Below, piece after piece: positions 15,311 through 62,170 of a DNA stretch of 63,743 bases. A model generated the notes under the pieces. That model saw only the letters and a list, made by a program, of their open reading frames with translations. It made no database searches and was not told the origin of the DNA. Position numbers and translations under genes: made by a program. Every line of letters begins with the position of its first letter. Position 1 is the stretch's first letter. The stretch comes from Octopus bimaculoides (Eukaryota), in contig NC_069004.1 in NCBI RefSeq assembly GCF_001194135.2, positions 29,768,445 to 29,832,187 on the forward strand, written 5' to 3'.

Positions 15311-15490
15311 ATGCGACAATTAAAAGGTCAAGTGAAGAAAGAGACGAAAAGAGAGAAGCGGGAGAGGAAAAAAGACTTCTTGGAGAACAAACAGAAGGTC
15401 TTCACCATTGTCTTACCCGTTTTCATTCTCCTCATCTGTTTGATCATCACATATGTATACTTCAAAACAAAACCAGTGTCCCAATACTGA
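15311..15490 (+). CDS. SMCO4: Single-pass membrane and coiled-coil protein 4, 59 aa, single coding exon
   Basis: MRQLKGQVKKETKREKRERKKDFLENKQKVFTIVLPVFILLICLIITYVYFKTKPVSQY matches recalled SMCO4 (MRQLKGKPKKET...one TM helix). Acceptor tttctcttcaccag ends at 15288, so a non-coding upstream exon is implied but not located. Confidence 0.93.
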   Translation: MRQLKGQVKKETKREKRERKKDFLENKQKVFTIVLPVFILLICLIITYVYFKTKPVSQY

Positions 15491-17666
15491 GATCAACAAC
15501 ATCCATGTTTTTCACTTCATATATCATCTCTCAGCATCTTTTCCAACTATGTATCATTCCTGATATCTGAAATTTTTATTGTTACACTGTCACTTTCATA
15601 CATAGAAATACACACACACATGAGCTGGCAGAAACGTTAGCAGGCCGGGCGAAATGCTTAGCGGTATTTCGTCTGCCACTACGTTCTAAGTTCAAATTGC
15701 GCCGAGGTCAACTTTGCCTTTCATCCTTTCGGGGGTCGATTAAATAAGTACCAGTTACGCACTGGGGTCGATACAATCGACTTAATACGTTTGTCTGTCC
15801 TTGTTTGTCCCCTCTGTGTGTAGCCCCTTGTGGGTAGTAAAGAAATAAGAAATACACAAACACACACAGATATGTGTGTGTATACATGATATCCTAAGGC
15901 GTTCATCTGACAGAGTCGCTACAGCGTCGGAAAAAATGCTTGGCGGTATTTCTTCCGACTCAGTACATTCTAAGTTCAAATTTCTTCCACCAAGGTCGAC
16001 ATTGCCCTTCATCCTTTCAGGGGTTGATAAAACAAGTACCAGTCAAGCACTGGGGTCAGTGTAATCAACTTGCTCGTCCACCTTCTCTCAAAAACTGCTG
16101 CTGGAAAGAACATTATATATATACACATATAGACACGGTAGCCTGGGGTATTCTTCTGCCTGGCCTACTCCTGTTGAATTGTCCAACACATGCCTGCATG
16201 GAAGGAGGACATTAAACGATGATGATGAATATATATATATATGTGTGTGTTTGTTAATATTTAGCAGATGCAACAGAGTGACTCAAGGTCTGAAAGTTTC
16301 GTGTGTTGGCACTTATCAAAGTGCCAATTCACAAAACTCTTGACCCATGAATCACTCTGTTACTTCTGCTAAATATTAATAAAATATATACATATGCTCA
16401 TATTTTGAGTTCTATTTTTCCTGTTTGCACCAACATACCTATATATATATATATATATATAATCTGTGGTGGTTTTTTGGTAAGCAGTGTCAATTTTTTA
16501 CAATTCTGTAAATTATAATAATATTTTATAAGCAACCACCATGTAATGATTAAAGAAAATAGTCTCTAATATTGGGGCCATCGATGGAAAAAAGTATTTT
16601 TGCCATCAAAGGTTTATATCTTCCATTATTAGGCTATTTTCTTTAGTCATTACACAAGGATTGCTTATAAGTTTTAAGCTTATAAAATGTGTATGTGTAT
16701 ACTCACACACACATGTTGTTCTCCTGAGTTCTGAATACGTGATAGTCATGAAATATCAACATTTAAGAAGGTACCAATTCTAGTCACAGTAAAGTTACCA
16801 TCTTGGAGCTACCAGTAACCTGCTCAGGAGTTCAAATCTTTCTATTACAACAATGTTGTTATGCTGTTCAGATAACCCCAGGCATTCAATTTCTCTCAGC
16901 TCCCTTCATCAACGATATAGGATTGGGATTCCCAACTGTAAAACTACTTGCCCGAATCACAATATCTCATATGTATTCCTAGCATGAAAAAAGAAATGTA
17001 TGTTGAAACAAAAGTATAATTTAAAGCTTTATAAATGGACTTAAGTATGTGTGTGTGTATATGTTTGCATGTATAGAGCTGATGTTTATTGCATAAGGTA
17101 AGATTTAAATCTTAATGCAATAAATAATGGTTTATTATTTACGTCATATATTATGCATATGTATATATGTGTATAAGAAGGGATGACTATTAAGTGGACA
17201 TCCAATATGCTAGAAAGAGGTCATCAATGACCCAACCACTTAATGGTCATCCCTTCTTATACACATGTAATACAATTTTTCTGAATTTTCAGATTTTTTT
17301 TATATGCTAGGCCACTTGGTTTTAAATTGAATTAATATTCAATTTATCACCCTCTATATATATATATATGTACATATATATATATATATATCTGTAATAT
17401 GTGGCAATTATTCGGTTGGCGTAATAAAACTCCAAATTTCGGATGTCGGGGTGGAAGCCTGCTCTGGCATCTCTTCAGTTATGAAGGCAATCAAAATATG
17501 CTATGGAAATGACCGTTAAACAAAGGGAAATTACTATGTAATTGACCACATCTGAAACTCGGAGTCTTATTATAGTAACCGAATAATTGTCATATATTAT
17601 ATTACAGATAAATTCCTCTATTTACATAATATTGTGGTCTCTTTCATTCTTTTGTTGTCTTACCAT

Positions 17667-17708
<42 letters not shown>

Positions 17709-17800
17709 GATACCTGTTTGTGATAGAAAAAAGACACACCACTCACCAATGACATTTGGACCACATATAGTATACAACATACTGTGAGTTAGTCTGTGTT

Positions 17801-17834
<34 letters not shown>

Positions 17835-18468
17835 TCACAATTGCATATTATATAAATATACATACACACATATATCTATAAGAAATGTTTCTCTATCTAT
17901 GTCTCTTTACATATATATAATCACACACACACATTCAAACATGCATACACACACACACATATATATGAAATAGAAGCTTTGTTTCTTTTTTTAAAAGATC
18001 AACTTCTGATGACCTACTTGCTCAACAAACCAACAAATTGCCTCCTTACTCTATTACAATAAACCCTGCATTTTGAAAATATAATCTACATTGAATTCGC
18101 TTAATTTTGACTAGAATTACATTTCCACCTGGTACTGAGGTAACAGACTTCACCAAAAATAACAAATCTTTTAAAGAGCCAATAAAATCTGAAGAACCTT
18201 TTTCTTTTCTTTGCTCTGTACTTTCTGCTATTGGTACATGGCCACAAGTTTTGGAGAAAAACGGCATAGTCAGTTAGCTTGACACTAGTATGTAAATGGG
18301 GTATAATCTAGCAAAGAACCCCAGAAGGATGAAAGATGAATTCAACTTTAGTGAGATTTGAACTCGGAACATGACAATATTACAATACATTTATCCAATA
18401 TTTTATTGTTTCTGCCATTCAGCCTTGTAGACTTCCATGTTTGATTCCTTATAAAACCAAAGCTTTAT

Positions 18469-18666
18469 AGTTCTATATTTAAGAGATGAGGAATTACATA
18501 CATTATTTACAATTGACGGATATTTGTCCTCATCTTGTTTATTATTAACACAACGTAATGGCTGATATACACTCAAGCCTTCATCAGGTGTCTTGGGGAA
18601 ATTTTGAACCTGGGTTCTCATTCCTGAGGTATTTTTCTATGTTGTTATTATTATTCAGGTGACCTA

Positions 18667-18697
<31 letters not shown>

Positions 18698-20104: not shown

Positions 20105-20302
20105 TCAATCTATGTTTCTAACAATGCGTCTGCAAAAGGGTGATTTCATCTCATCAAGAGCTTTTTCCAGTTCCTTAGTTAACTGAACAAGGTTCCCAGG
20201 GTCAGTTTGTAGATGGTGTGTTGTGACTTCATCATCCTCTTCTAAGTGGAGCTTCAGCAGAACGTTTGGCATCACCTGGTGCCTCATGGATCGACTTGCA
20301 AC
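20105..20302 (-). CDS. COMMD2: COMMD2 exon 5 (stop)
   Basis: VASRSMRHQVMPNVLLKLHL...LQTDPGNLVQLTKELEKALDEMKSPFCRRIVRNID*. Confidence 0.95.
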   Translation of the reverse strand, partial: VASRSMRHQVMPNVLLKLHLEEDDEVTTHHLQTDPGNLVQLTKELEKALDEMKSPFCRRIVRNID

Positions 20303-21158
20303 CTGTAATGCAAAGGAAAAGAAAATCATTTAGGAAAAGGGACAGATAATTCAAATTCTTTACAGTACTGGACCAGTTGTTGGCACTCCATCGCTTACGA
20401 CGTCGAAGGTTCCAGTTGATCCGATCAACGGAACAGCCTGCTTGTGAAGTTAACGTGCAAGTGGCTGAGCACTCCACAGACACGTGTACCTTTAACATAG
20501 TTCTCGGGGATATTCAGCGTGACACAGTGTGACAAGGCTGACCCTTTGATTTACAGGCACAACAGAAACAGGAAGAAAGAGTGAGAGAAAGTTGCGGAAG
20601 AGTACAGCAAGGTTCGCCACGATCCCCTGCCGGAGCCAACAATGACCGAGTTGCGCCATTAGACCACCAGGTCGGAATAAATACAGCAGTAATTTTTTCA
20701 TCTTTTAAGTATTCTAGTCACTAGACTGCAGCCATGCTGTGGCACCAGCTAGAAAGGTCTACTCAAGCAAGTCAACCCCAGCATCTATTTTTTTAACTCT
20801 GGTGCTTATTCTTAGGTCTCTTTGCCAAACTGCTAAGTTATAAGGACATAAATAAACCAACACAAGTTGTCATGTGGTGGTGGTAGGAGAGACACAAACA
20901 CATACACACACACATGACAGGCTTCAGGACAGTCTTTACTAAATACACTCACAATACATTGATTAGCCCAGGGCTATAGCAGACAATACTTGTTTATGGT
21001 GTTGTACAGTAGAAATGAACCTGAAGTCACATGATTGCAGAGAAAGCTCCTTCAACCACATAACCATGTTAAAACAAAACAAAAATTTTTTTAAAAAATA
21101 AATATAATTATTTTTTTTAAATAAATGGAAAAATAAAATACTAGGAATGTTTGCTCAC

Positions 21159-21332
21159 CTGAACATCAAAACGCCATTCTAAATTGTCATAATGTGGCAA
21201 CTCCATAGACATTTCCGAAAGAATATTCCGGATGTTTCCTCTGTTTTCTAGATACATAGTGAGCAAAATGTCTATTTTGTCATCTTGGAAGCCAAGAATA
21301 CTTAAAGACTCTTTGTATTCTGTTTCAGGAAT
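21159..21332 (-). CDS. COMMD2: COMMD2 exon 4
   Basis: IPETEYKESLSILGF...LPHYDNLEWRFDVQ, including the COMM-domain LEWRxDV motif; donor GTGAGC. Confidence 0.94.
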
Positions 21333-21389
21333 CTGTAAAGAACATCATTATCATAATAACAACAACAACAACAATAATGATAATGATAA

Positions 21390-22290
21390 CACAAGGTCCG
21401 AAATTTTGAGGGAGAGGACAAGTCAATTACATCAACCTGTGTTTTTTTTTTTTGGTACTTAACAACCGTGAAAGGATGAAAGGCAAAGTCAACCTCGGCA
21501 GGATTTGAACTCAGAATGTAGCGATGAGCGAAATACTGCTAAGCATTTTGCCTGGCATGCTAATGATTCTGCCAGCTCACCACCTTAATAATAATGATAA
21601 TAATAATAATAACGATAATAATAATAATAATGATAGTAATAATAATGATGATGGTTTCAAATTTTTCCACAAGGGCAACTATTTTGAGGGAGAGGATAAA
21701 TTGATTACATCAACGCCAGTGTTCAACTGGTACTCTTACTATCAACCCTGGAAGGATGAAAAGCAAAATTGACCCCAGCAGAATTTGAACTCAGAACATA
21801 AAGATGGACGAACTACCATTAAGCATTTTGCCCAGCACCATAACAATTCTTCCAGCTCACCACCTTAATAATAATAATAACGATGACTTCAAATTTTTGC
21901 CTCAAGGGCCGCTTGGGGGAAGGGATCAAGTCAATTACATCGACCGCAATGTGTAACTGGTAGTTATTTAACCGAGCCCCGAAAGGATGAAAGGCAAAGT
22001 TGACCTCGGCAGAATTTGAACTCAGAACGTAGCAACGGGTGAAATACTGCTAAGCGTTTCACCTGGTGTGCTAACGATTCTGCCACCTTGCCACCTTAAT
22101 AATAATCCTTTCTACTGGAGGCACAAGGCCTCGAATTTGTGGGGAAGGGACTAGTAGATTACATTGACCCCAGTGTTCGACTGGTACTTAATTTATCGTC
22201 CTTGAAAGGATGAAAGGAGAATATGAACTCAGAATGTACGGATGGGCAAAAATACCGCTAAGCATTTCTCCAGGTGCACTAACGATTCTG
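21390..22290 (-). mobile_element. Chain of 4-5 family B SINEs separated by (AAT)n tracts
   Basis: Repeated gaaaggatgaaaggcaaagtcaacctcggcagaatttgaactcagaa in COMMD2 intron 3. Confidence 0.85.
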
Positions 22291-22475
22291 CCAGCGCGTC
22301 ACCCGGAAACATGTGGTTGGGAAGCAAACTTCTTACCACACAGCTGCCCCATGGTATCTTTTTACAGCAGCTAGGCAGACTAGGACATTAGGTGACAATG
22401 ATGAACAACACTTTGGTTAATGTCATGTGACTATCTTTTTACATGGCTATAATGAAAATACCAAGATTTACTTAC

Positions 22476-22558
22476 CATAAATCGTGAGGTCTCTGTCAGG
22501 AGGTACATCAACCCTTCCACGGCCGACTGAACAACTTTAGTCTCCACGTCGAGTTTCT
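22476..22558 (-). CDS. COMMD2: COMMD2 exon 3
   Basis: (Q)KLDVETKVVQSAVEGLMYLLTETSRFM; acceptor ttttctgcag, donor GTAAGT. Confidence 0.93.
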
Positions 22559-22699
22559 CTGCAGAAAAGATTCCATATTAAATAAAGTATTTTAGGAGAT
22601 GTGAAGGCATGTGTGGCTTAGTGGTTAGGTTGTTTAGAAATAATACATTTCTAAATCTCTCAGAGAGATTTATGCAGTAGTGATACGATGAAGTAGTTG

Positions 22700-22915
22700 T
22701 ATGCTGTCAATTTAATGTGACGGTCCCATGAAGGGAATAATACTACTGTTGGTTAGGCCTAGGAAGCTGCACCGCTTCCTGTCGGCCTTGACACGTTTCC
22801 TGTGTCCTTATGTTTACAAGGGGGAGACAAGCACCTCCACCCAGCTAAGCCGGCATCCAGAGACATGTTTCTGAGTCTTTGCTCGTCATCAGTCTGGAGT
22901 AGCAGTCTGGTTAGG
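22700..22915 (-). mobile_element. Dispersed repeat carrying the second hammerhead (possible Penelope terminal repeat)
   Basis: 22700-22830 is homologous, inverted, to 48896-49020. Confidence 0.6.
22856..22898 (-). ncRNA. Second, unrelated minimal type I hammerhead motif
   Basis: Minus strand TCCAGA-CTGATGA-CGAG(caaaga)CTCA-GAAAC-AT-GTC-TCTGGA: 6-bp stem I, GUC site, palindromic ACATGT. Confidence 0.72.
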
Positions 22916-23221
22916 TTGTTGCACTCACAATTGCTGGAGTGTGGACTGGATTCCTAGATCGGGTGGCACATTGTGCTCTTGAGCAAAACATTTCATTCCA
23001 TGTTGCTCCAGTCTCCCTTTCTCAATCAGGGATTGGAACGTTGGCCTGCTCGTCTAGCCAGCAGGGTGGCACTGATGCAAAGCACACTGTGACTAGTGAT
23101 GTGTAACATCATCTGATAGTCTGGTCAGTCACATGATCACATGATTTTTGTAATCAACTAACCCCTCCCACCAAATTTCAGGCCTTGTTTCTATAATGGT
23201 TAGTCTACATTACTTCATGAA

Positions 23222-23560
23222 GGCATACGGCTCAGTGGCTAGAGCATCGAGCTCATAACCATGAGGTTGTGAGTTCAATTCCCAGATTGGGCTGTGCGCT
23301 GTGTTCTTGAACTAGACACCTTATTTCATGTTGCTCCAGTTCTCTCATCTGTGGAAATGAGGTGCAGCATCACTGGTACCAAGCTGTATCAGCCTTCAGC
23401 TTTCCTTGGACAACATCAGTGACGTGAAGAAGAGGGGCTGGTATGAATGGGTGACTGCTGGTCTTCCACAAAATAACCTTGACCAAACTTGTGCCTTGGA
23501 GGGGAACTTCCTAGGTGCAATCCCATGGTCATTTGTGACCGAAGGGGGGTCTTTACTCTT
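23222..23560 (+). mobile_element. tRNA-headed SINE (family D); inverted 3' fragment at about 42050-42220
   Basis: GGCATACGGCTCAGTGGCTAGAGC...GAGTTCAATTCCC head; body ctttcccttggacaacatc...ctaggtgcaatccc...gaccgaagggggg recurs inverted at 42 kb. Confidence 0.72.
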
Positions 23561-23874
23561 TACCCTTTTATATTACTCCATAAGGAGCACAGGGCCAGTT
23601 TCCTGGTTTCTCTGGCATAAATATTCCTCCCTGGATGGGACGCCAGTCCATCACAGGGTTACTCATTCTTACCAGCTGAGCGGACTGGAGTAATGTGAAA
23701 TGAAGTGTCTTGCTCAAGACCACAGCAGATCTCCTGGTCTAGGAACTGAAACCACAATCTTACAATCATAAGTCCAACACCCTAACCACTAAGCCATGTA
23801 TCTCCACCTGTTCCTATAATGGAAAGGATTGGTCAGATTAATTACAAAAATAATGATAGAAAATTTCAACTTAC

Positions 23875-23952
23875 GTGCGGCACCTTGGTAAACTTTTGGG
23901 TTGGCGCCATTTTCAATGAACTGCAAGGAGATGCGACAGAATTCCCGAACAA
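23875..23952 (-). CDS. COMMD2: COMMD2 exon 2
   Basis: (V)VREFCRISLQFIENGANPKVYQGAA; acceptor ttctag, donor GTAAGT. Confidence 0.93.
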
Positions 23953-24239
23953 CTAGAATGGAAAATATTAATGCTATGATAATTGTGATAATTAAATACA
24001 TGCATATGTGTGATTGTATGGGTGTATGTATATAAATATGATTGAGCATATATGCACATCTATACATATATGTGTGTATGTATGTGTCAGCATGCATACA
24101 CATATATATGTGTGTGCGTGTGTGTATATCAATATTGGGTCATCCCATAAATAATGCAGTTTTTTTCAACTGTATGAAATAAACTACCTGCATCAACTTG
24201 CTAATATAATCAGGTAGTAATTTTACTTTGTACTTATTC

Positions 24240-24540
24240 TTAGTACTTCAACTTACGTCGTTTCGAGTTACGTCTTTTTCGGCTTTACGCTGATTTTTTT
24301 TTAAAGGAAATTAATGAAAAAAAAATGATTAAACCTTAACTTCAGTCTGCCTCAACGAACACATTTAAAAAGCATAAAAATTATTTTTTGAATCACCTAA
24401 AATCAATACTAGAAAACGTTTATTAGCACAGATAATAAGCAAATGAGATTTTTCAAAATGATCTTCGTGTTACGTCGTTTTTCGAGGTAAGTCGAACGTC
24501 TTGGAACCAATTACCGGTGTAAAGTTGAGGTATGCCTGTA
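24240..24540. mobile_element. Tigger/pogo-like MITE, left end degenerate
   Basis: agtacttcaacttacgtc ... tgtaaagttgaggtatgcctgta ends. Confidence 0.5.
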
Positions 24541-24743
24541 TATACATTTCACAGACAAATAAGACGAGAAGGCTACGGTTGGAACCACTGTTGATCATGA
24601 ATCAGCTGAATCAGAGCAAGACCCGAGAAGGGGGCGGATACAGAAAAACAACAATAGCCATAATTCGAATAAGAACTACCATTAATTTCAGCATCATGCT
24701 CCGTGCGTTGGTCTTTTAATGAATTAAACAAATTATATTCATT

Positions 24744-24971
24744 ATGAGGGTGGTGGTGGTGGTGAAAAGTTCCTGGCTTTAAGGGTGTCGCGAAAGGCCT
24801 GGTTGGAGGCCCAACCTTCCGAGTTCTTTTACAGGGTTTAGAAAAACTGAAGGACCGCTGAAATAAATGTGTGAATCAGAGAGGGGAATTATGTTGAATA
24901 AAATCATAATCAACTGATCCTCCTACATTCTCTTTTACCCAAAACCAGGAACTTTTCAGCACCCACCTCGT
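24744..24971 (+). mobile_element. Mariner deletion derivative (MITE-like)
   Basis: TIRs around TGAAAAGTTCCTGG / CCAGGAACTTTTCAGCACCCACCTCGT; interior reads LQGLEKLKDR*NKCVNQRGE-YVE*, the mariner C-terminus. Confidence 0.8.
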
Positions 24972-52935: not shown

Positions 52936-52966
<31 letters not shown>

Positions 52967-53172
52967 CACACACATGTAAGCAATAGAAAGGGCACCTGGC
53001 CATAGAAAATATTCCTCGATAAAATTGTCTGGCCCAGGCAAGTTCAGGAAAGTGGGCATTAAATTATGATACATATATACACACATATATACACGTATAC
53101 AAATATACTAATACACCCAAACATCTGTATTTCTGTACATCATTAATTATTTTTGTCAATGATCTCTTCTAG

Positions 53173-53312
53173 GACGATCCCGAAATTGCAAAACGGCGCA
53201 TGATGAAACGTTATAAGAAGAACATTAAACTCCGCCAGAATGTGGCTCTGTCGAAGCTACACGACGACAAGGTCACAAAATACGTGCGAGAAAACAAACA
53301 CATCATTTCTAG
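53173..53312 (+). CDS. CEP295: CEP295 exon
   Basis: DDPEIAKRRMMKRYKKNIKLRQNVALSKLHDDKVTKYVRENKHIIS+AG. Confidence 0.88.
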
Positions 53313-54539
53313 GTAAAGGGCTTTGCTGTCTGAATAACTATTGTGCTTGTAACATTTTATTTTGATGTCATGAGTGTTGTCCCATCAATTTCGTTTGTTG
53401 TGTAGGTAACTTATCTGATGGAGATGTAGGCTGGCAGGTAAATAGTATTTAACCACTGACTCAAGTATCTCTACTGTCTATCTTTCGTTTACTGCGTGCT
53501 TGAATAATTGCAGATAGACAGGTAGTCAAAATAGTTTTTTAAACACTTCTGGCTTACTCTTTTACTTGTTTCAGTCATTTGACTGCGGCCATACTGGAGC
53601 ACTGCTTTTAGTCAAGCAAATCAATCCCAGGACTTATTCTATCGGTCTCTCTTTTGCCGAACCGTTAAGTTACGGGGACGTAAACACACCAGCATCGGTT
53701 GTCAAGCGATGTTGTGGGGACAAACATATACACGCAAACATATACACACACATACATATATACGACGGGCTTCTTTCAGTTTCCGTCTACCAAATCCACT
53801 CACAAGGCTTTGGTTGGCCCGAGGCTATTGTAGAAGACACTTGACCAAGGTGCCACGCAGTGGGACTGAACCCAGAACCATCTGGTTGGTAAGCAAGCTA
53901 CCCATAAACACATGTACGACAGGCTATTTCCAGTTTCTGTCCACTTCAATCTTTTCTGGGTGTTGTCACAGATTTGGAAATTTTAAAATCAAGTGAAAAT
54001 TTTCAAAATTTGGTAAATCGATGTGATTTTACATGCTAAATCCAAATTTGGGATCTGTTTGTTCCCAGAAAAATTTAGGAAAATGTAACAGAGATTCAGA
54101 GATTGATAATTTTTAGTCCAACCAGAATCAGAAGCGAATCATTTTCTGCGTGACAGATATCTGTCACAAAATGATAGACAGAAATAACAAACACACAAAA
54201 TGATATTGCAAGTCAAAACTTGTGGTTGCAGTGGTGAAAGTGTCACAATCTTGCGAGTACACACTCCTTGTTACAATGGAAACAGGGCACACTACATCCT
54301 TTGCTTGTTCCTATGGAAACAGACACCAATCTGTGCTTTAAGGTCATGTGCATAATGCTGACTTTCGATTGGTTAAAATCTCCCAAAATTTGCAAACTTT
54401 GAAAGCTGTTAACTTTTTATCAATCCATGGTGAAAATGAATTTCATTTCGTAGTTGTTATACGGAATAAATCGGTATAACCAAATTTGTAAACAATTGGA
54501 ACAAAATTGAAAACAAATGAAATCTCAATTAGATTTGTC

Positions 54540-54690
54540 TATTATTTACATTACTTACATTTGACGGATATTTGTCCTCATCTTGTTTGTTGTTAACACG
54601 TTNNNNNNNNNNCCCCCAGCCTTCATCAGGTGTCATTCATTTAATAATAATAATATCGAAAAATACCATAGGAATGAGAATCGAGGTTTG
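54540..54690. mobile_element. Same element, short inverted junction with an internal N gap
   Basis: Minus tail and core (...cagccttcatcaggtgtc) joined to plus-strand aataat-atcgaaaaataccataggaatgagaa. Confidence 0.7.
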
Positions 54691-55171
54691 AAGTATAACT
54701 AAAAGTATAGGGGAAAAACTTACATTCAGGTTACACTGCGGCACATATAGCATCGTCTCGTGGCACACCAGTGTGCCGTAGCATACTGGTTGTGGGGGTT
54801 CTGGTTTATATGGAAGGCAATAATACGTTGACTTAAAGGAAACCACATATCTTTCTCTTAATTCAAACAAAGAACCTACCTGAGCCCTCTCGCTTGTCTG
54901 TTCAACTTGTCCAACCCATGCCAGCATGGAAAAATGATGATTTTAATAATGATGAATTCACTGCTTTTTTTGTGTGTGTGTGTGTGTGTGTTTTTCTGTC
55001 TGTTTTGTCTTCTTTTTTTTATAGTTATCCAAGAGAGGAGAGACAGTACACCTGAGATGGTTCCATGCCCTTAGAATTCTGGCAGCTTGCCACTTTTTAG
55101 GAAACCAAGAGAATAATTCTTGTTTCCAATTACCATTCCATTTTCACAACTGATGTTTTTCTTCTCCTCAG

Positions 55172-55266
55172 GAAAGCAGCTTTGGAAACGGAGAAGGCAC
55201 GAGCTCTGAAGATAGCATCATTGCCTCCACCAGAGAAAAATATTTTTGAAGAAGTTAAGCAATTGA
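55172..55266 (+). CDS. CEP295: CEP295 exon
   Basis: KAALETEKARALKIASLPPPEKNIFEEVKQL+A, donor GTAAGT. Confidence 0.9.
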
Positions 55267-56306
55267 GTAAGTAAANNNNNNNNNNTGCAATTTCTTAGAC
55301 ATTTTTTTTTTTACACAAGTAGAATTCCCTGAATGACTGAAGATCAGGAAAAGAAGTGGTGAGATGCTGTGAAATGGTAACAATGAAAGACTGATAAACA
55401 TATATCTTTTGTCTTTTGCTTGCTTCAATCATTGGACTGTGGCCATGTTGGAGCACTGCCTTGAAGAATTTTTTAGTCGAATGAATCAACACCAGGACTT
55501 ATTTTTCCCCTTTTTAAAGCCTGGTACTTATTCTGTTGATCATTTTTGCCAAACTGCTAAGTTACAGGGAGATAAACATACCAATACCAGTTGTCAAGCA
55601 GTGGTGGGAGACAAACACAGACACAAAGACACACACACACATGCACACAATGGGTTTCTTTCTGCTTCCGTGTACCAAATCCACTCAGAAGGCTTAGGTT
55701 GACCTGAGGCTATAATAGAAGACATTTGTCCAAGGTGCTATGTAGTGGGACTGAACCCGGAACCATGTGGTTGGGAAGCAAGTTTTATACCACACAGCCA
55801 TGAAACAATTATTGATACTTGTGTGAGTGTGAGGCAGGTACCTAGTGGTGTTGATGGCAAGTCAATCCAGCACAACCCCACGATTTGAATAGTGCTGATG
55901 ACCCCCAAGGGGAAGGACTTAAGACTGGATAGTAGTCAGTTGATCTGGTAGGCAATGCCTTAAATCAGTAAGGGAGGAGCTGGTTTGCAGTAAATCTGTC
56001 CAAGAGAAAGGCCCTCAAATACTGCACATTTTCCCTTGATAACCCCTGAAACCTACAGGTGCCTTGAGTATGCAGAGCTTTTAATTCGAAGCAGTTGCAC
56101 AAACAAACAGCTTACAACTTTTTGTGTGTGTCTTTGTATGGCTGTGTTTATGTGTGTGTGTCTCTGTATGGTTATGTCTGCCTTTGTACGTATGCTTATG
56201 TCTGGTCACGTATGTGTGTGTGTGTGAATGTTTTGTGCTGTTTGTGCACTTTTAATTTTCCTTCGTTTGATATTGATTGGCGTAATATCTTCACGTTCCG
56301 CTTCAG

Positions 56307-56398
56307 TGGTTCCTGCAAGGAAGAACAAGTCCATTGCTCCGCATTCCCGAATTTCTTATCCATCTCCTCCGCTTGTGGAAAAACATGACAAGAATTCG
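56307..56398 (+). CDS. CEP295: CEP295 exon
   Basis: (M)VPARKNKSIAPHSRISYPSPPLVEKHDKNS; phases 1-0 fit both neighbours. Confidence 0.8.
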
Positions 56399-56735
56399 GT
56401 AAGGAAATCATTATTATTCACCCATGCTTTTCCCCTTTTAATAATATTATGTGAATGCATGCGTCTCCTTGTGTTGACAACACATCATCATCATTCTACA
56501 TCCATTTTCCATGCTGGCAAGGGTTGGACGGTTTTGCAAGAGCTGACAAGGCCAAGAGTCACACTAGGTTCCATTATCTGTTTTGGCATGGTTTCTGCAG
56601 CTCAATGCCCTTTCTAACGCCAACCACTTCACAGAGTGTACTGGGTGCTTTTTAGATGGCACCATAACCAGTGACAATTGTACTTCCATCAAACATTACC
56701 ACATGGCAAAGTATATTCTTAGTATCCCCTCATAT

Positions 56736-57032
56736 ACATTATTTACATTTGATGGATATTTGTCCTCATCTTGTTTGTTAACAACAACGTTCTGGTTGAT
56801 ATACCCTTCAGCTGTCTTGGGGAAATTTATGTTGTTATTATTATTATTATTATTATTATTGTTCAGGTCACTGCTTGGAATCAAACTCGGAATCTTGGGG
56901 TTAGTATCCCATGCTCTGAACCACTGCGCCATATGCCTGTGGGCATATGGTGTAGTGGTTAACAAACAAGATGAGGACAAATATCCGTCAAATGTAAATG
57001 TACATAATTCCTCATCTCTTAAATATAGAACT
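56736..57032. mobile_element. Same element, head-to-head inverted dimer
   Basis: Minus copy with tRNA head at 56862-56937 and core deleted; plus copy from 56942 jumps from head to tail; 14-bp flanking repeat GTATCCC(C/T)TCATAT at 56722 and 57033. Confidence 0.8.
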
Positions 57033-57368
57033 GTATCCCTTCATATGATTGGTAACAATATAGTAATTACTGTCTTGAGTCCAAGGGATCATGGGGGCCA
57101 GTTACCCAGTTTCTATAAGTGACAGATCACCAGGGTTCCCCCTTAATGGGTCACCAGTCTGTCATGGGGACTCGATTACATAGGAGTAGACTAGGGCAAT
57201 GTGAAATGAAGTGTTTTCTCAAGAACACAACACACTGCCCAGACCAGGAATCGAAACCACAATCATGAGATCATGATTGTAACACACTTATTACTAGACC
57301 ATGCATGCCTCCATAGATATTGTAGCACCTGCATAAAGTAAATGAAACCCCAACTCTCTTTATTTCAG

Positions 57369-57512
57369 GTGGAAGACGGCTACCTTGCTGCTCAAGCTCA
57401 AGATTTACTTCTCCAAGAACAAGAACGACAAATAAAGCAGACTTCAGAGAAACAAGAACATATTCAGAAAGAACGTTACCGAAAAGCCTTACAAATAGAA
57501 TTACTCAATAGG
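57369..57512 (+). CDS. CEP295: CEP295 exon
   Basis: VEDGYLAAQAQDLLLQEQERQIKQTSEKQEHIQKERYRKALQIELLNR. Confidence 0.88.
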
Positions 57513-58754
57513 GTAAGTCAGCGATTCTTATTTTCAAAATATCCTGTTCTTGTTTTAGTCATTGGACTGCGACCATGCTGGGACACTGCCTTGAAGGGTT
57601 TAGTCAAACAAATTGACCCCAGGACTTTTTTTTTGGTAAAATCTGGTACTTGTTCTCTATCAGTCACTTTTGCCGAGCCACTATGTCATGGAGACAAACA
57701 AACCAACGCCATTTGACTGGTGCTGGAACACATACGTGCACACAACACGTTTCTTTTTTTTTTTTTTTCTGTCTACCAAATCCGCTCTGTTATAGCCTAA
57801 GATTATAGTAGAAGTCACTTCCAGAAGAAACTGTGCAGTGGAACTGAACCTACAACCATGTGGTTGGGAAGCAAACTTCTTACCACACTTCCACACTCGT
57901 GCCTATTTTGCAATTTTAATTTTTCATGTTTGTCTGTATCTGGATGGTCTTTCACATGGATTACAATTGAAGAGTTTCAGGATTCCATATAAAATTATTT
58001 CCTTGAGATTTTGAAGTCAGACATCAAGTGTGTATGGAAGAACTGCGATTTACAAGATGCAGTCCAGAAGTTCTCAGGCTTTTTCAGGAAAGACATTAAT
58101 TTCAAAGAAGTCCAAAACCAGTCTAGAATATTTCATGAGTTTTTGTAGGATTTTTGTCCAGTTTAACATGAAAACTTTATTGCCGAGTGAGCTTCCAAAT
58201 TGTCTTCGTATCCTGACAGCATTCTGCAAACTAGTCAGATGTCACAAGCAGCGTGCTGTTACAGCCGTTAACCTCAATCTGGAATAACTGCTCTTACAAA
58301 AGTTTCAAAACTTTGGGACCGCACCTCAAATATCACTCTGGTTATCATCTCCAAACTTTTATCTGCCATTAATTCATTGATCAAATCAGGCATTTTCAAT
58401 CATTTTTCATCTATGGACCTCTTTGATTGACCCCCCCCCCCATAACCATTCATTGTTTGAAAACTAGTTTTATAGAATGTTATTTATTAATGCTTTCACA
58501 CATCAAATTGTGTAGGTTGGTCTGTGTAGAATGTTAAAGAAAGAAACCTAGATGTTTCTTGCGATACATACCAATGCACACATCTAAGGCAAAATTTTTT
58601 TCCAGGGCCTTTAAAATACTCTTGTCCTCAAAGAATGATTAGCGGCCATTTTTCAAAGTGTTGACGAAAAAGGAAACTCCGGAAAAAAACGGATCACCAA
58701 ATTTAGTAACGAAGGTTACCAAATGTACAGGAATGCTAAAAAGAAAAAGATTAA

Positions 58755-58890
58755 GTTATCTCCCTTGGATTAGAAATCTCAAAGGGATTGCAGTTGTCTC
58801 CCTTAGATTAGAAATCTCAAAGCGCTTGAAGTTGTCTCCCTTGGATTAGAAATCTCAAAGGGATTGAAGTTGTCTCCCTTAGACTAGAGA
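58755..58890. repeat. 38-bp tandem repeat, about 3.5 copies
   Basis: GTTGTCTCCCTTGGATTAGAAATCTCAAAGGGATTGAA starting at 58755, 58793, 58831 and 58869. Confidence 0.9.
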
Positions 58891-59196
58891 GTTCAAAGTT
58901 TTTTTTATATCAGTTGATAGAGCACAGACAGGATGTGGTAGCGTACGGATTCCTATCTTAAAGGATGTTTAATGTTGGTTATTCCTGTAATGATGTTAAA
59001 TATCTACCAAAAACTGGAATTATCTCAATAAACGTGGAATATGTTAAAAACAAAAAAAAATTGGTTTCTAATATACCATTCCTCAACAAAAGATAGACTG
59101 GTAGTTAAAACTGCAAATGTTTTCTCCGATAGCATTATGAAAAGGTTTGGATGATGGAAACTGAAAGAAGCCTAGCGTGTGTGTGTATATATATTT

Positions 59197-59388
59197 ATGA
59201 GAGCTTGCTGGAAAGTTCCTGGCATTAAGAGTGTCGTGAAAGGTTTGGTTGGAGGCCCAACATTCTAAGTTCTTCTACAGGGCTTAGAAAAACTGAAGGA
59301 CTACTGCAGTAAGTGTATGAACCCGAAAGGGGAATATGTTGAATAAAATCCGTCTGTATTTTCTTTTATCCAAAGCCAGGAACGTTGA
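59197..59388 (+). mobile_element. Second, more diverged copy of the mariner derivative
   Basis: gaaagttcctggc...cagggcttagaaaaactgaaggac...ggggaatatgttgaataa...ccaggaacgttga matches 24744-24971. Confidence 0.78.
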
Positions 59389-59390
59389 TA

Positions 59391-59421
<31 letters not shown>

Positions 59422-60214
59422 CTATAAGTCAGTGGGGTTGTGTTAACTGCACGTGGAGAAATAATAGGAAAATGAAAAAAAGCCAGAATGCTAAACTGGA
59501 AGCATATTTTAATAAAGATTTCTTCTAACCGGTTTTCATTGCGAAAAGCAAATTATCAAGAAGGAGAATGAAAATGTTTTTTTACAAAGAAGTACAAAAT
59601 GAAGAAAGTAATATATAAAACAATAATATATTAAAAAATAAATATACCCATACGTTATATTGTCTTTGAGCTTTTGTAGTTCAATAGTAGTTCATGTATA
59701 AACTGGTAGGAAAAATAAGGATGCATGNNNNNNNNNNNNNNNNNNNNNNNNNNNNNNNNNNNNNNNNNNNNNNNNNNNNNNNNNNNNNNNNNNNNNNNNN
59801 NNNNNNNNNNNNNNNNNNNNNNNNNNNNNNNNNNNNNNNNNNNNNNNNNNNNNNNNNNNNNNNNNNNNNNNNNNNNNNNNNNNNNNNNNNNNNNNNNNNN
59901 NNNNNNNNNNNNNNNNNNNNNNNNNNNNNNNNNNNNNNNNNNNNNNNNNNNNNNNNNNNNNNNNNNNNNNNNNNNNNNNNNNNNNNNNNNNNNNNNNNNN
60001 NNNNNNNNNNNNNNNNNNNNNNNNNNNNNNNNNNNNNNNNNNNNNNNNNNNNNNNNNNNNNNNNNNNNNNNNNNNNNNNNNNNNNNNNNNNNNNNNNNNN
60101 NNNNNNNNNNNNNNNNNNNNNNNNNNNNNNNNNNNNNNNNNNNNNNNNNNNNNNNNNNNNNNNNNNNNNNNNNNNNNNNNNNNTATAATGAATTTAGGGT
60201 TTTTTTGTTTCAGT

Positions 60215-60497
60215 TAAAAAATGTGCACGCCCTAATTGTGGTACCTGCCCCTACCTACTTGAAGGCTCTGAATTTACCTTCAAATGAGGAACAAAGTTTA
60301 AAATTAAAACCAATTTCTCTTGTTCCTCTGGTAACCTCATTTATGTCCTCACTTGCGCAGGTTGCCAAAACTTCTATATCGGACAGACGAGCCTCCCATT
60401 GCGTAGAAGAGTAGCTGTCCATAAGGAACAAATAAACCTCCCTCAATACCGCCAAATTCCACTCAGTAGCCACATAGACTCTTGTGCCAGAAACATT
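60215..60497 (+). mobile_element. Penelope-like element GIY-YIG endonuclease relic
   Basis: KKCARPNCGTCPYLLEGSEFTFK*GTKFKIKTNFSCSSGNLIYVLTCAGCQNFYIGQTSLPLRRRVAVHKEQI: Cys-rich linker plus IY...YIGQT motif, one in-frame stop. Confidence 0.88.
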
Positions 60498-60524
60498 GTT
60501 ATGATCATTGAAAACATATTGTAG

Positions 60525-60848
60525 CCTGGTGCCGGTGGCACGTGTAAAGGCATTTGAGCGAGATCGTTGCCAGTGCCGCTGGACTGGCTCCTGTGCAGGT
60601 GGCAAGTAAAATACACCATTTCGAGCGTGGCTGTTGCCAGTACCGCCTGACAGGCCTTCGTGCCGGTGGCACGTAAGAGCACCCACTACACTCTCTGAGT
60701 GGTTGGTGTTAGGAAGGGCATCCAGCCGTAGAAACTCTGCCAAATCAGATTGGAGCCTGGTGTAGCCATCTGGTTTCACCAGTCCTCAGTCAAATCGTCC
60801 AACCCATGCTAGCATGGAAAGCGGATGTTAAACGATGATGATGATGAT
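60525..60848 (+). mobile_element. SINE family C with (GAT)n tail and internal tandem units
   Basis: ...gagtggttggtgttaggaagggcatccagc...catgctagcatggaaagcggatgttaaacgatgatgatg. Other copies near 29758, 31637, 35243, 36010, 39210, 51318, 51685, 52720, 62240 and 62955. Confidence 0.85.
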
Positions 60849-60989
60849 ATCTTATTGAAAAAAACAACAGAAGATTGTTGTTGTTTACCTCCTGATCTGT
60901 TCTGAAATAGCAGTTTTATGAACTGCCAAATCACCTGTCACCATTCCCCCTTTTCCTGTTATTTTTTCAGGCCTGATGCATCTTTCTTA

Positions 60990-61520
60990 CAAAGGCCTTT
61001 CACTCTCTATGGAGTATCAACCATTGACAACTTTTCTTTTGTGCTCTTGACTGCGGACCGTCTCCTGTTGGATCCTTGCTTTTTCATTTCTGCCTCAATA
61101 TCCTTTCTCCATTTATTTTTAAAGTGCCCCCTCTTCTGCCTCCATTGTGGGTTCCAAGTCTAGACCTTATGTGTAATGCAGTATCTTGGTTTCCTTGAGG
61201 TGTGGCCCATCCAGTCCCACTTGTGCTTCAGGATCTATTCTTCCATTGGCACCTGACCTCAATCCCATTCTGCTACAGGTCTTTTGTATGGCAACTTTGT
61301 TGTTTCTTCTCATCATCAGATGGGGAGTTGACCTTGTAACTTCCTTTTGGAGTTTGCAGCGCCATATCATGATTCCCCGAGTGAAGGCCATCCTCTCCCA
61401 TGTCTTGTTGGTTTTCAGTTATCATCAATGCTTCTATAACTTTACATTTTTCCAAGTAGTGTTGTTGGTTCTACACAAACCCATTTTATCTCTGAGAAGA
61501 AGTGATCCATTTTAGTCTAA
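60990..61520 (-). mobile_element. RTE-clade LINE relic
   Basis: Minus strand KHKWDWMGHTSRKPRYCITHKV*TWNPQWRQKRG matches the RTE WIGHTLRK...WNPQGKRKRG motif. Confidence 0.78.
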
Positions 61521-62086
61521 CCTCCATCCTTTAACCTATCCAGCATAGAAGAGCCTGTCAGGTGCTTGCACTCTGCTAGCATAGCTCTCAGATGCATACA
61601 AGCCTTCACACTGCAACAAGGACTGGACCTTGTGGTGAACCTTATGTATCTAGGACTACATTAGTCGGTTTGCCCTTTCTCTCTTAAAATTTAAAGTGTG
61701 TGCTTTATGGAGATTTGGTTGTTATTTCTAGTAGGTGAATTGACCATAAGAAGCTCTTATAGAGCCTTTATGCAATACCCTGAATACAACAGAGTTTTTA
61801 TAGAATACCCTATCATAATAAAGGGTATTCAATAACCCCCAATTTTCTGGTCATGCAATTACTTAGACACTCCGTTATTGGTCCCTCTTAATGAACATCT
61901 ACCTCATCACTCAGCTCCCTAATTGAGTAGATGAATCTTTATTTGTAAACTTGCTGTGCTGTCTTTTACTGTGTGGGTTTGAAAGGTTTATTATTCTTGA
62001 ATATCTGTGTAATTGTACCAAACTACTACAGTTGTGTAAAGCCAACCGTTGGAGCATCTGTGACTTGTTGTTCTTTTCCATTCCAG

Positions 62087-62170
62087 GATAGTAAAAAGAT
62101 GATGAAGGAGATCAGCTTCATACAAAAGAAGCAAACCAGGCAGAGACAGAAGAATTTGGCTAAAATCCCT
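62087..62170 (+). CDS. CEP295: CEP295 exon (last one found in the window)
   Basis: DSKKMMKEISFIQKKQTRQRQKNLAKIP, donor GTAAGT. Confidence 0.88.

What the first reader, a model, noticed from the sequence alone, without database searches (positions are those of the whole stretch)
15311..62170. SMCO4-COMMD2-CEP63/DEUP1-CEP295: apparent ancient microsynteny linking two centriole genes
Seen: four consecutive genes, SMCO4(+), COMMD2(-), CEP63-like(+), CEP295(+). Recalled: human 11q21 has DEUP1-SMCO4-CEP295 adjacent, while the paralogue CEP63 and COMMD2 are both on 3q. Established: coleoid genomes are heavily rearranged relative to other bilaterians. Inference: the block predates the protostome-deuterostome split and was divided between vertebrate paralogons. 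Keeping a centriole duplication factor beside a centriole-to-centrosome conversion factor hints at co-regulation.
Basis: partly seen in the sequence, partly recalled or inferred. Interest (0 to 1): 0.7.

Follow-up and report, generated by a model that had tools for sequence, protein, structure and literature searches.

The report
Ancient neighbourhood of two centriole genes
In this Octopus bimaculoides window, SMCO4, COMMD2, a CEP63/DEUP1-family gene and the start of CEP295 lie side by side, and parts of this arrangement recur in scallop, limpet, ribbon worm, amphioxus, acorn worm, sea urchin and human, so it is an old animal gene neighbourhood rather than an octopus accident.

Summary
The window is Octopus bimaculoides. 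It holds SMCO4 (+, 15311-15490), COMMD2 (-, 5 exons, 26099-20105), a CEP63/DEUP1-family gene (+, 12 exons, 26469-40854) and the first 8 exons of CEP295 (+, 49718-62170, which runs on past the window). Every assembly gap falls in an intron or between genes. All splice sites are GT-AG and all frames are kept. The gap-free Argonauta hians contig has the same order and strands.

CEP63 and COMMD2 sit head-to-head in Octopus, Argonauta, Pecten, Lottia, Lineus and amphioxus. SMCO4 sits tail-to-tail with COMMD2 in Octopus, Argonauta, Pecten and Lineus. CEP295 sits tail-to-tail with COMMD2 in Ptychodera and Lytechinus. Human has DEUP1-SMCO4-CEP295 at 11q21, and CEP63 and COMMD2 on 3q. These overlapping adjacencies place all four genes close together in the bilaterian ancestor.

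The exact four-gene order was seen only in octopods. The only invariant feature is the CEP63/COMMD2 divergent pair, which in octopus has 369 bp between start codons and a cluster of ETS motifs. Co-regulation of CEP63 and CEP295, and a split by whole-genome duplication, remain untested inferences. This is a new example of a known kind of feature, conserved microsynteny, and of moderate interest.

The parts
15311..15490 (+). SMCO4 coding exon. It encodes 59 aa with a basic N-terminus and one hydrophobic helix. The stop codon is at 15488-15490.
   Evidence: It matches Pfam DUF4519 (PF15012) at E=2.9e-24. Argonauta has a 74.5% identical ORF, Pecten 45.6% and Lineus 51%, in the same place relative to COMMD2.
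20105..26099 (-). COMMD2, with 5 coding exons: 26099-26033, 23952-23875, 22558-22476, 21332-21159 and 20302-20105. The product is 199 aa. The assembly gap at 25005-25193 lies in intron 1.
   Evidence: Splice sites were read from the sequence. The product is 100% identical to NCBI O. bimaculoides COMMD2. It carries the COMM and HN domains. Its best solved-structure match is human COMMD2 at E=3.7e-67.
26100..26468 (.). A 369-bp stretch between the COMMD2 and CEP63 start codons, which is the putative bidirectional promoter. A 23-bp unit repeated 2.8 times at 26209-26271 carries three ACTTCCG cores. An inverted CGGAAGT lies at 26270-26276, and there is a CCAAT box.
   Evidence: Four of the window's five ACTTCCG/CGGAAGT 7-mers lie here. 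TRF reports the repeat. One such 7-mer also lies near the COMMD2 start in Pecten, Lottia and Branchiostoma. No transcription data were available.
26469..40854 (+). CEP63/DEUP1-family gene with 12 exons: 26469-26488, 30463-30655, 31409-31504, 32353-32496, 33550-33654, 34457-34581, 35062-35200, 35824-35946, 37149-37279, 37869-37954, 38855-39153 and 40708-40854. The product is 535 aa. Three assembly gaps lie in intron 1.
   Evidence: All junctions are GT-AG and in frame. Pfam CEP63 scores 34.9 bits against a cut-off of 33. The exons are colinear with Argonauta CEP63-like P0001. The annotated 536-aa product carries PF17045. The N-terminus matches human CEP63 chain 9i7q_B at E=0.015. BLASTP against Lottia CEP63 gives E=4e-9.
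49718..62170 (+). CEP295, the first 8 coding exons: 49718-49825, 51065-51160, 52132-52236, 53173-53312, 55172-55266, 56307-56398, 57369-57512 and 62087-62170. Together they encode 288 aa. The gene continues beyond the window. Gaps at 54603-54612, 55276-55285 and 59728-60183 lie in introns.
   Evidence: All junctions are GT-AG and the frame is continuous. The exons are colinear with one uninterrupted Argonauta ORF at E=1.5e-69. There are 128 homologues aligned N-terminus to N-terminus, named CEP295 or KIAA1731. The sea-urchin and acorn-worm members carry PF28375 (CEP295NL), and the sea-urchin one also PF15309 (ALMS motif).

Best explanation
The block is a surviving piece of a gene neighbourhood that already existed in the last common ancestor of bilaterians.

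Its core is a divergently transcribed CEP63/COMMD2 pair. In octopus the two start codons are 369 bp apart around a cluster of ETS-type motifs, which looks like a shared bidirectional promoter. A shared promoter cannot be split without damaging both genes, so the pair stays together. SMCO4 and CEP295 were close neighbours of that pair. Local inversions and transpositions have since shuffled them. SMCO4 lies 3' of COMMD2 in lophotrochozoans, CEP295 lies 3' of COMMD2 in ambulacrarians, and CEP295 lies 3' of CEP63 in octopods.

In vertebrates the neighbourhood now exists as two complementary remnants. DEUP1-SMCO4-CEP295 is at human 11q21, and CEP63 and COMMD2 are on 3q. The simplest reading is duplication of the whole region followed by reciprocal gene loss.

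Status of each step:
- Shown: gene identities, gene order, and the adjacencies in ten species.
- Inferred: promoter sharing, constraint as the reason for retention, and duplication of the whole block in vertebrates.
For: -
- The same four genes, in the same order and on the same strands, occur in gap-free Argonauta loci.
- CEP63(-)/COMMD2(+) are head-to-head in five further species:
  - Pecten has 433 bp between the genes, and the neighbour carries PF17045 and PF25771.
  - Lineus shows the same arrangement.
  - Lottia has an unannotated CEP63 at Pfam E=5.6e-36, plus PF25771 at E=2.2e-8.
  - In Branchiostoma the neighbour scores Pfam CEP63 E=2.1e-68.
- SMCO4(-) lies 3' of COMMD2(+) in Argonauta, Pecten and Lineus.
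- CEP295(-) lies 3' of COMMD2(+) in Ptychodera and Lytechinus.
- Human order and locations come from PMC6454239 (CCDC67, SMCO4, CEP295), PMC4567323 (WWTR1-COMMD2 at 3q25.1) and PMC8317149 (CEP63 at 3q22.2).
- The ETS motif cluster is confined to the intergenic stretch.
- From general knowledge, not tested here: YAP1 (11q22) and WWTR1 (3q25.1), and HEPHL1 (11q21) and CP (3q24), are paralogue pairs that link the same two human regions.
Against: - The exact four-gene order is seen only in octopods.
- Mizuhopecten CEP295 has none of the other three genes within 10 kb.
- Ambulacrarian COMMD2 has BRCC3 or an F5/8C-domain gene, not CEP63, at its 5' side.
- Amphioxus has BRCC3, not SMCO4, 3' of COMMD2.
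- The cnidarian shows no linkage within 10 kb.
- The 369-bp spacing depends on an annotated 20-nt first exon. Argonauta's CEP63 start is 2.3 kb from COMMD2, and the promoter DNA does not align between the two octopods.
- The three ETS cores on one strand are copies within a 23-bp tandem repeat, so they are not independent events.
- No expression, chromatin or phylogenetic test of the vertebrate duplication was possible.
- Published work dates DEUP1 to a later, lobe-finned-fish ancestor. This is Zhao et al. 2013 as I recall it; PMC4862167 records only that zebrafish lacks Deup1 and that Deup1 arose from cep63.
Confidence: 0.72

Rival explanations
1. The block is a co-regulated centriole gene cluster. 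On this view the genes are kept together because CEP63 and CEP295, both of which act upstream of CEP152 recruitment, share enhancers or a chromatin domain that times their expression. COMMD2 and SMCO4 would be bystanders trapped inside that regulatory landscape.
For: A CEP63-family gene and CEP295 remain within one neighbourhood in octopods and in human, where DEUP1 and CEP295 are separated only by SMCO4 (PMC6454239). ANA1/CEP295 is needed to recruit Asl/CEP152, and both CEP63 and DEUP1 bind CEP152 (PMC5839779). A functionally related vertebrate locus, MCIDAS-CCNO-CDC20B, is a precedent (PMC8470418).
Against: CEP295 changes side and strand between lineages, and in Mizuhopecten it is more than 10 kb from the others. 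In ambulacrarians CEP295 keeps COMMD2 as its neighbour, not CEP63. No conserved non-coding sequence was found between the two octopods near the promoter. No expression or Hi-C data were available.
Confidence: 0.2
2. The linkage is neutral leftover. The genes were neighbours in the ancestor and simply have not yet been separated in slowly rearranging genomes, with no selective constraint of any kind.
For: SMCO4 and CEP295 adjacency is patchy across species, as expected for slow decay. Most species sampled are known slow evolvers, which is general knowledge.
Against: Octopod genomes are heavily rearranged (general knowledge, not checked here), yet both keep all four genes. The CEP63/COMMD2 head-to-head arrangement is identical in six species of three phyla, with short spacers of 369 bp to 1.2 kb in four of them. 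This is the signature of a constrained bidirectional pair.
Confidence: 0.25
3. The block is an artefact. Either the order was created by mis-scaffolding across the many N gaps, or the 'CEP63-like' and 'CEP295' calls are generic coiled-coil look-alikes.
For: There are nine gaps inside the finding. Octopus CEP63 passes the Pfam cut-off by only 2 bits and lacks a detectable PF25771 motif. The word-indexed homologue search returned only one CEP63 hit and no CEP295 hit.
Against: All gaps are intronic or intergenic and no frame is broken. Gap-free Argonauta contigs reproduce the order. The chromosome-level GenBank record annotates CEP63 and COMMD2 in the same places. Positional orthology with strongly scoring CEP63 genes in other phyla supports the call. 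The full HMMER search gives 88 CEP295 homologues at E<=1e-10, aligned N-terminus to N-terminus.
Confidence: 0.03

Closest known systems
Human 11q21 cluster DEUP1(CCDC67)-SMCO4-CEP295
   Same: It holds a CEP63-family gene, SMCO4 and CEP295 as immediate neighbours (PMC6454239, Table 1). Orthologues or pro-orthologues of the same three families are in the octopus block.
   Different: Human lacks COMMD2 in the block, because COMMD2 is at 3q25.1 (PMC4567323). In human SMCO4 lies between the two centriole genes, whereas in octopus COMMD2 and SMCO4 lie on the far side of CEP63. The human family member is the vertebrate paralogue DEUP1, whereas octopus has a single CEP63/DEUP1-type gene in the block.
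Conserved metazoan microsyntenic blocks, as catalogued in comparative genomics (Irimia et al. 2012 and Simakov et al. 2013, cited from memory)
   Same: Unrelated genes are kept adjacent across phyla for more than 500 million years. The core is a tightly spaced pair whose regulatory DNA is probably interleaved.
   Different: I could not check whether this block is in those catalogues. No searchable paper combines these gene names with synteny. Two of the four genes act in the same pathway, which is unusual for such blocks.
Bidirectional-promoter gene pairs with ETS/GABP motifs
   Same: The octopus start codons face away from each other and are 369 bp apart. ACTTCCG/CGGAAGT motifs and a CCAAT box cluster between them. 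The orientation is conserved across phyla.
   Different: Promoter sharing is inferred from the sequence only. The spacing is 2.3-4.5 kb in the Argonauta and Lineus annotations. In human, from memory, CEP63's head-to-head partner is ANAPC13, not COMMD2.
Vertebrate 'multiciliation locus' MCIDAS-CCNO-CDC20B
   Same: It is a conserved cluster of functionally related centriole and cilia genes, with synteny used as evolutionary evidence (PMC8470418).
   Different: That locus is restricted to vertebrates and its co-regulation has been shown experimentally. The present block is bilaterian-wide and its co-regulation is untested.

Membership tests
SMCO4 (Pfam DUF4519) | A protein of about 59 aa that matches PF15012 end to end, with a basic N-terminus and a single hydrophobic helix | tested here: met
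   The match is E=2.9e-24, 85.4 bits against a cut-off of 27, covering residues 1-55 of 56. The hydrophobic stretch VFTIVLPVFILLICLIITYVYF can be read directly from the sequence.
COMMD2 | A COMM domain plus an HN domain, and closer to COMMD2 than to any other COMMD paralogue | tested here: met
   The protein carries PF07258 and PF21672. Human COMMD2 matches at E=3.7e-67 against COMMD9 at 3.5e-6. All top database hits that carry a descriptive name are named COMMD2.
CEP63/DEUP1 family | The N-terminal CEP63 domain (PF17045) at or above Pfam's gathering score | tested here: met
   The score is 34.9 bits against a cut-off of 33, E=1.8e-8, covering profile positions 2-259 of 263. The margin is narrow. 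Support comes from Argonauta P0001 at 40.7 bits and from the precomputed PF17045 hit on the annotated product.
CEP63/DEUP1 family | The C-terminal CEP152-binding coiled coil (PF25771) | tested here: not met
   Neither the octopus nor the Argonauta protein gives a PF25771 hit at E<=1. The solved-structure search with the C-terminus found no CEP63 match. The same library finds the motif in Lottia at E=2.2e-8, and it is on record for Pecten and Lineus. The octopod C-terminus is conserved between the two octopods but is divergent from the motif.
CEP63/DEUP1 family | Positional orthology, meaning the same neighbour and orientation as undisputed family members | tested here: met
   The gene is head-to-head with COMMD2, as in Pecten, Lineus, Lottia and Branchiostoma.
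CEP63 versus DEUP1 assignment | A tree placing the octopus gene outside the vertebrate CEP63/DEUP1 split (pro-orthologue) or with one of the two paralogues | not tested
CEP295 (Ana1) | The conserved N-terminal region, aligned N-terminus to N-terminus with named CEP295 proteins | tested here: met
   There are 128 hits, 88 of them at E<=1e-10. Query residues about 10-288 align to residues about 8-290 of proteins that are mostly 1200-2550 aa long. Hits are named CEP295 in Patiria, Mizuhopecten, Lingula, Potamilus and Lytechinus, and KIAA1731 in Elephantulus.
CEP295 (Ana1) | The CEP295NL domain (PF28375) and the C-terminal ALMS motif (PF15309) | not testable with these tools
   PF28375 was not matched by either octopod CEP295 sequence in the local Pfam copy. 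It is on record for the homologues P0146 and P0147 and for Mizuhopecten. The C-terminus with the ALMS motif lies beyond the end of the window.
Ancient bilaterian microsyntenic block | The same gene adjacency in at least one protostome and one deuterostome phylum | tested here: met
   CEP63/COMMD2 adjacency is found in Mollusca, Nemertea and Cephalochordata. The remaining pairs overlap through COMMD2, SMCO4 and CEP295 (PMC6454239).
Ancient bilaterian microsyntenic block | Retention beyond the genome-wide background for ancestral neighbour pairs | not testable with these tools
No whole-genome permutation was possible.
Bidirectional promoter pair | Divergent orientation with less than about 1 kb between the transcription starts | tested here: inconclusive
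   The spacing is 369 bp between start codons in Octopus and 433 bp between gene models in Pecten. It is 1.1-1.2 kb in Lottia and Branchiostoma, and 2.3-4.5 kb in the Argonauta and Lineus annotations. Transcription start sites are unknown.
Vertebrate 2R ohnologue pair (DEUP1/CEP63) | The paralogues lie in paralogous chromosome regions and the duplication dates to the vertebrate stem | not tested
   Map positions from the literature fit this reading (PMC6454239, PMC4567323, PMC8317149). The supporting paralogue pairs YAP1/WWTR1 and HEPHL1/CP are recalled from memory only. No dating was done.

The most novel reading that the evidence does not exclude
The four genes formed one tight cluster in the bilaterian ancestor, and the whole cluster was duplicated in the vertebrate genome duplications. 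DEUP1 would then be the copy that stayed in the ancestral SMCO4-CEP295 context, while CEP63 kept only loose linkage to COMMD2. On this reading the deuterosome factor DEUP1 is an old 2R ohnologue that teleosts such as zebrafish lost secondarily, not a late invention of lobe-finned fishes. The persistent linkage of a CEP63-family gene with CEP295 would reflect shared regulation of two steps that both feed CEP152 recruitment.
Probability: 0.3. Interest if true: 0.65.

Novelty: new member of a known kind. Interest (0 to 1): 0.45.

Why it matters
The block gives positional evidence, independent of weak coiled-coil sequence similarity, that mollusc, nemertean and amphioxus 'CEP63-like' genes are true orthologues of the vertebrate CEP63/DEUP1 family. 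One phylogenetic-profiling study grouped CEP63 with genes present in chordates (PMC8470418).

It also provides a testable handle on when and how DEUP1, the protein that builds deuterosomes in multiciliated cells, arose. If the neighbourhood was duplicated as a block, DEUP1 dates to the vertebrate stem.

It identifies a deeply conserved CEP63/COMMD2 divergent pair as a candidate bidirectional promoter. And it offers a rare case in which two genes of one organelle-assembly pathway have stayed linked for more than 500 million years, even in the heavily rearranged octopus genome.

Tried and rejected
- The word-indexed homologue search with the rough CEP63 model returned only the Argonauta protein. 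With the CEP295 N-terminus it returned nothing at E<=10. Low-complexity coiled-coil words and the 5.8-billion-sequence E-value scale are the likely causes. The full HMMER search rescued CEP295.
- I suspected that the 2368-aa gene next to Pecten SMCO4 was CEP295. Its first exon (MYSPFCKKFERHH...) is unlike any CEP295 N-terminus, and the scallop CEP295 N-terminus does not hit that stretch. The claim is dropped as unproven.
- The look-up of Mizuhopecten CEP295 isoform X2 found no record. Isoform X1 worked but showed no SMCO4, COMMD2 or CEP63 within 10 kb, and no DNA similarity to the Pecten locus.
- The octopus equivalent of Argonauta's CEP63 exon 1 (MADNRYNNPQSLW...) was not found. It may lie in a gap or may not exist.
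- Promoter DNA does not align between Octopus and Argonauta, apart from COMMD2 exon 1 and one repeat element.
- The octopus CEP63 C-terminus gave no match to solved CEP63 structures.
- Rfam found no RNA genes in the window, and so no counterpart of human SCARNA9 or the snoRNA cluster near CEP295. The ten largest intronic or intergenic ORFs have no Pfam domain.
- Literature searches found no paper that reports this synteny.

Full report
**What the window is.** The 63.7-kb window has 38% G+C and 13 runs of N. A COMMD2 model built from it is 100% identical over its full length to NCBI's Octopus bimaculoides COMMD2. The encoding record is chromosome CM046624.1 of GCA_001194135.2.

**The gaps.** Exon cores were located by six-frame translation and tblastn. 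Junctions were then fixed by requiring GT-AG and frame continuity.
- The SMCO4 coding sequence is a single uninterrupted ORF (15311-15490).
- COMMD2 has five exons on the minus strand (26099-20105). Gap 25005-25193 is in its first intron, and the protein is complete.
- The CEP63-like gene has twelve exons (26469-40854, 535 aa). Gaps 27099-27154, 27837-27891 and 29155-29631 are all in intron 1. Gap 40886-41399 starts 32 bp after the stop codon.
- Gap 48147-48894 is intergenic.
- CEP295 starts at 49718 and contributes eight exons up to 62170 (288 aa in one frame). Three further gaps (54603-54612, 55276-55285, 59728-60183) lie in its introns.
- No reading frame has to be carried across a gap.

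The Argonauta hians contig contains no N in the two loci fetched. It carries SMCO4(+), COMMD2(-), CEP63(+) and CEP295(+) in the same order. The gene order is therefore not a scaffolding artefact. One weak point is CEP63 exon 1. It is only 20 nt and is supported by the GenBank gene range, a GTAAGT donor and frame compatibility. The counterpart of Argonauta's first exon was not found.

**Identity of the genes.**
- *SMCO4.* It matches Pfam DUF4519 at E=2.9e-24.
- *COMMD2.* It has the COMM and HN domains. Human COMMD2 is by far its best solved-structure match, at E=3.7e-67 against 3.5e-6 for COMMD9. Every top hit that carries a descriptive name, across animals, is named COMMD2.
- *CEP63-like.*
  - The refined model passes Pfam's CEP63 threshold narrowly, at 34.9 bits against 33, but over almost the whole profile.
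  - Its N-terminus aligns to the human CEP63 chain 9i7q_B at E=0.015.
  - It aligns to a Lottia CEP63 at E=4e-9.
  - The annotated product at this locus and its Argonauta orthologue both carry PF17045.
  - The C-terminal CEP152-binding coil PF25771 is not detectable in the octopod proteins, although it is found in Lottia, Pecten and Lineus. The octopod gene is therefore a fast-evolving member of the family.
  - Whether it is a pro-orthologue of both CEP63 and DEUP1 was not tested.
- *CEP295.* The word-indexed search failed. A full HMMER search of 1.84 billion representatives found 128 homologues, 88 of them at E<=1e-10. Nearly all align their first ~290 residues to the query's 288, and most are 1200-2550 aa long. 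They are named CEP295 in starfish, scallop, Lingula, a freshwater mussel and sea urchin, and KIAA1731 in a mammal. Two of them are the very genes found next to COMMD2 in Lytechinus and Ptychodera. The Lytechinus gene carries PF28375 (CEP295NL) and PF15309 (ALMS motif), and the Ptychodera gene carries PF28375.
- *Nothing else in between.* No other Pfam-bearing ORF and no Rfam RNA lies between the four genes.

**Synteny elsewhere.** COMMD2 orthologues were used as anchors, with 10-kb flanks. Unannotated neighbours were recovered by tblastn and Pfam. In the table COMMD2 is drawn as (+).

| Species | Arrangement | Calls |
|---|---|---|
| Octopus, Argonauta | CEP295(-) CEP63(-) COMMD2(+) SMCO4(-) | 14, 15, 19, 22, 25 |
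| Pecten maximus | CEP63(-) COMMD2(+) SMCO4(-), 433 bp between the first two | 16, 19 |
| Lineus longissimus | CEP63(-) COMMD2(+) SMCO4(-) | 43, 46 |
| Lottia gigantea | complete but unannotated CEP63(-) directly upstream of COMMD2(+); Pfam CEP63 E=5.6e-36, PF25771 E=2.2e-8 | 23, 25, 79 |
| Branchiostoma belcheri | CEP63(-) COMMD2(+) BRCC3(-) DUF229(+); Pfam CEP63 E=2.1e-68 | 17, 79 |
| Ptychodera flava | BRCC3(-) COMMD2(+) CEP295(-); CEP295 is split into two gene models that a Glandiceps protein bridges | 24, 27, 57 |
| Lytechinus variegatus | COMMD2(+) CEP295(-) | 44, 57 |
| Dendronephthya (cnidarian) | none of these neighbours within 10 kb | 42, 46, 81 |
| Mizuhopecten | CEP295 with a DUF229 gene 3' of it; none of the other three within 10 kb | 61, 62, 81 |
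| Human | gene list for an 11q14.3-q21 deletion gives ...SLC36A4, CCDC67 (DEUP1), SMCO4, CEP295, SCARNA9...; local order at 3q25.1 is TM4SF4-WWTR1-COMMD2-ANKUB1; CEP63 is at 3q22.2 | PMC6454239, PMC4567323, PMC8317149 |

**What this means.** With roughly 20,000 genes per genome, a given gene is the immediate neighbour of another given gene about once in 10,000 by chance. The CEP63/COMMD2 divergent pair occurs in six species of three phyla spanning the protostome-deuterostome split, so it is ancestral. The other adjacencies are COMMD2-SMCO4, COMMD2-CEP295, CEP63-CEP295 and DEUP1-SMCO4-CEP295. They overlap through shared members, so the most economical reconstruction puts all four genes within a few tens of kilobases in the bilaterian ancestor, with later local inversions and transpositions. 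The exact octopus order was seen only in octopods, so I do not claim the order itself is ancestral.

**Mechanism.** The only invariant feature is the head-to-head CEP63/COMMD2 pair.
- In octopus the start codons are 369 bp apart.
- Four of the window's five ACTTCCG/CGGAAGT (ETS-core) 7-mers lie within 68 bp of that spacer. Three of them sit in a 23-bp tandem repeat, and a CCAAT box lies nearby.
- A single such 7-mer also lies close to the COMMD2 start in Pecten, Lottia and Branchiostoma.

This is the usual architecture of a bidirectional housekeeping promoter, and it would explain why this pair resists separation. It remains an inference. No transcription start data were available, the spacer is longer in the Argonauta and Lineus annotations, and the promoter DNA does not align between the two octopods.

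That is biologically plausible, because CEP295/Ana1 is needed to recruit CEP152 and both CEP63 and DEUP1 bind CEP152 (PMC5839779). It is untested, and the changing side and strand of CEP295 weaken it.

**Vertebrates.** The two human remnants are complementary, which is what block duplication followed by reciprocal loss would produce. From memory, YAP1/WWTR1 and HEPHL1/CP are paralogue pairs that link 11q21-q22 with 3q24-q25, and WWTR1 is indeed COMMD2's immediate neighbour (PMC4567323). If the reading is right, DEUP1 would date to the vertebrate stem, and its absence from zebrafish (PMC4862167) would be a loss. As I recall it, Zhao et al. 2013 place its origin in a lobe-finned-fish ancestor. 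No tree or basal-vertebrate synteny could be produced here.

**Comparison and novelty.** The block is a new example of a known phenomenon, deeply conserved microsynteny. No paper in the searchable library links these genes with synteny, though the block may be buried in large microsynteny catalogues that I could not check. It matters for three reasons. It gives positional support for CEP63-family orthology in invertebrates. It bears on the origin of DEUP1. And two genes of one centriole pathway have stayed linked even in a rearranged coleoid genome. I rate interest at 0.45. The stronger reading, a block-duplicated and co-regulated centriole cluster with DEUP1 as a 2R ohnologue, has about 0.3 probability and would merit about 0.65.

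Noticed in passing
L005:27063-30174 (Argonauta hians), compared with window 49718-62170: The Argonauta CEP295 orthologue is one uninterrupted ORF of at least 1037 codons. It covers all eight octopus exons, so at least seven introns were lost at a syntenic locus. It also has long Ser/Ala/Gly-rich insertions. This is possibly reverse-transcript-mediated intron loss.
   Followed up: partly
window 15311-15490; L002:16383-16547; L003:20851-21018; L009:13998-14162: The 59-codon SMCO4 gene is not called in the annotations returned for Octopus, Argonauta, Pecten or Lineus. It was found only by tblastn. Small-ORF genes like this can hide microsynteny from annotation-based scans.
   Followed up: yes
window 26209-26276: A 23-bp unit repeated 2.8 times (ACTTCCGTTTAGAAACCGAAACA), plus an inverted CGGAAGT, sits in the COMMD2/CEP63 spacer. 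It holds four of the five ETS-core 7-mers in the whole window.
   Followed up: partly
L007:24411-31287 (Ptychodera flava): CEP295 is annotated as two separate genes of 1281 aa and 537 aa. The Glandiceps protein P0133 aligns across both. The 537-aa model ends in a clear ALMS-type motif (NRLYNQLEEVKERK...).
   Followed up: yes
L004, L007, L011: BRCC3 and a DUF229-domain gene recur next to COMMD2 or CEP295 in amphioxus, Ptychodera and Mizuhopecten. The ancestral neighbourhood may therefore have been larger than four genes.
   Followed up: no
L004:7970-8576 (Branchiostoma belcheri): The CEP63 exon-2 region is present in at least four near-identical tandem copies. A downstream exon (AAERDQKNHSKDLSRLEESLH...) is also repeated many times. 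This is probably an assembly or haplotype artefact or a local tandem duplication.
   Followed up: no
window, e.g. 1172-1398, 7991-8372, 27344-27682, 44791-45167, 53554-53900: About 25 copies or fragments of a ~350-bp SINE-like element lie in both orientations in introns and intergenic DNA. They are 70-92% identical to the copy used as query, and many lie next to (TA)n/(CA)n microsatellites that border the assembly gaps.
   Followed up: partly
window 50632-50863: A 30-bp minisatellite repeated 7.8 times, at 95% identity, lies in CEP295 intron 1. It creates a spurious 150-160-codon ORF (annotated from 50317, 151 aa; stop-to-stop from 50281, 163 aa; ending about 50770) that has no Pfam match.
   Followed up: yes
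window 38855-39153 (CEP63 exon 11): This exon encodes a highly acidic Glu/Asp-rich segment (EEQDYDDDEEEVEIEEVEEEVEEE...). Argonauta shares it, but it is not part of the CEP63 Pfam domain. It probably swamped the word-indexed homologue search.
   Followed up: no
L003:23268-24442 (Pecten maximus): A 2368-aa gene with no Pfam hit starts 2.2 kb from SMCO4 on the opposite strand. Its length is close to scallop CEP295 (2343 aa), but its first exon is unrelated. Its identity is unresolved.
   Followed up: partly
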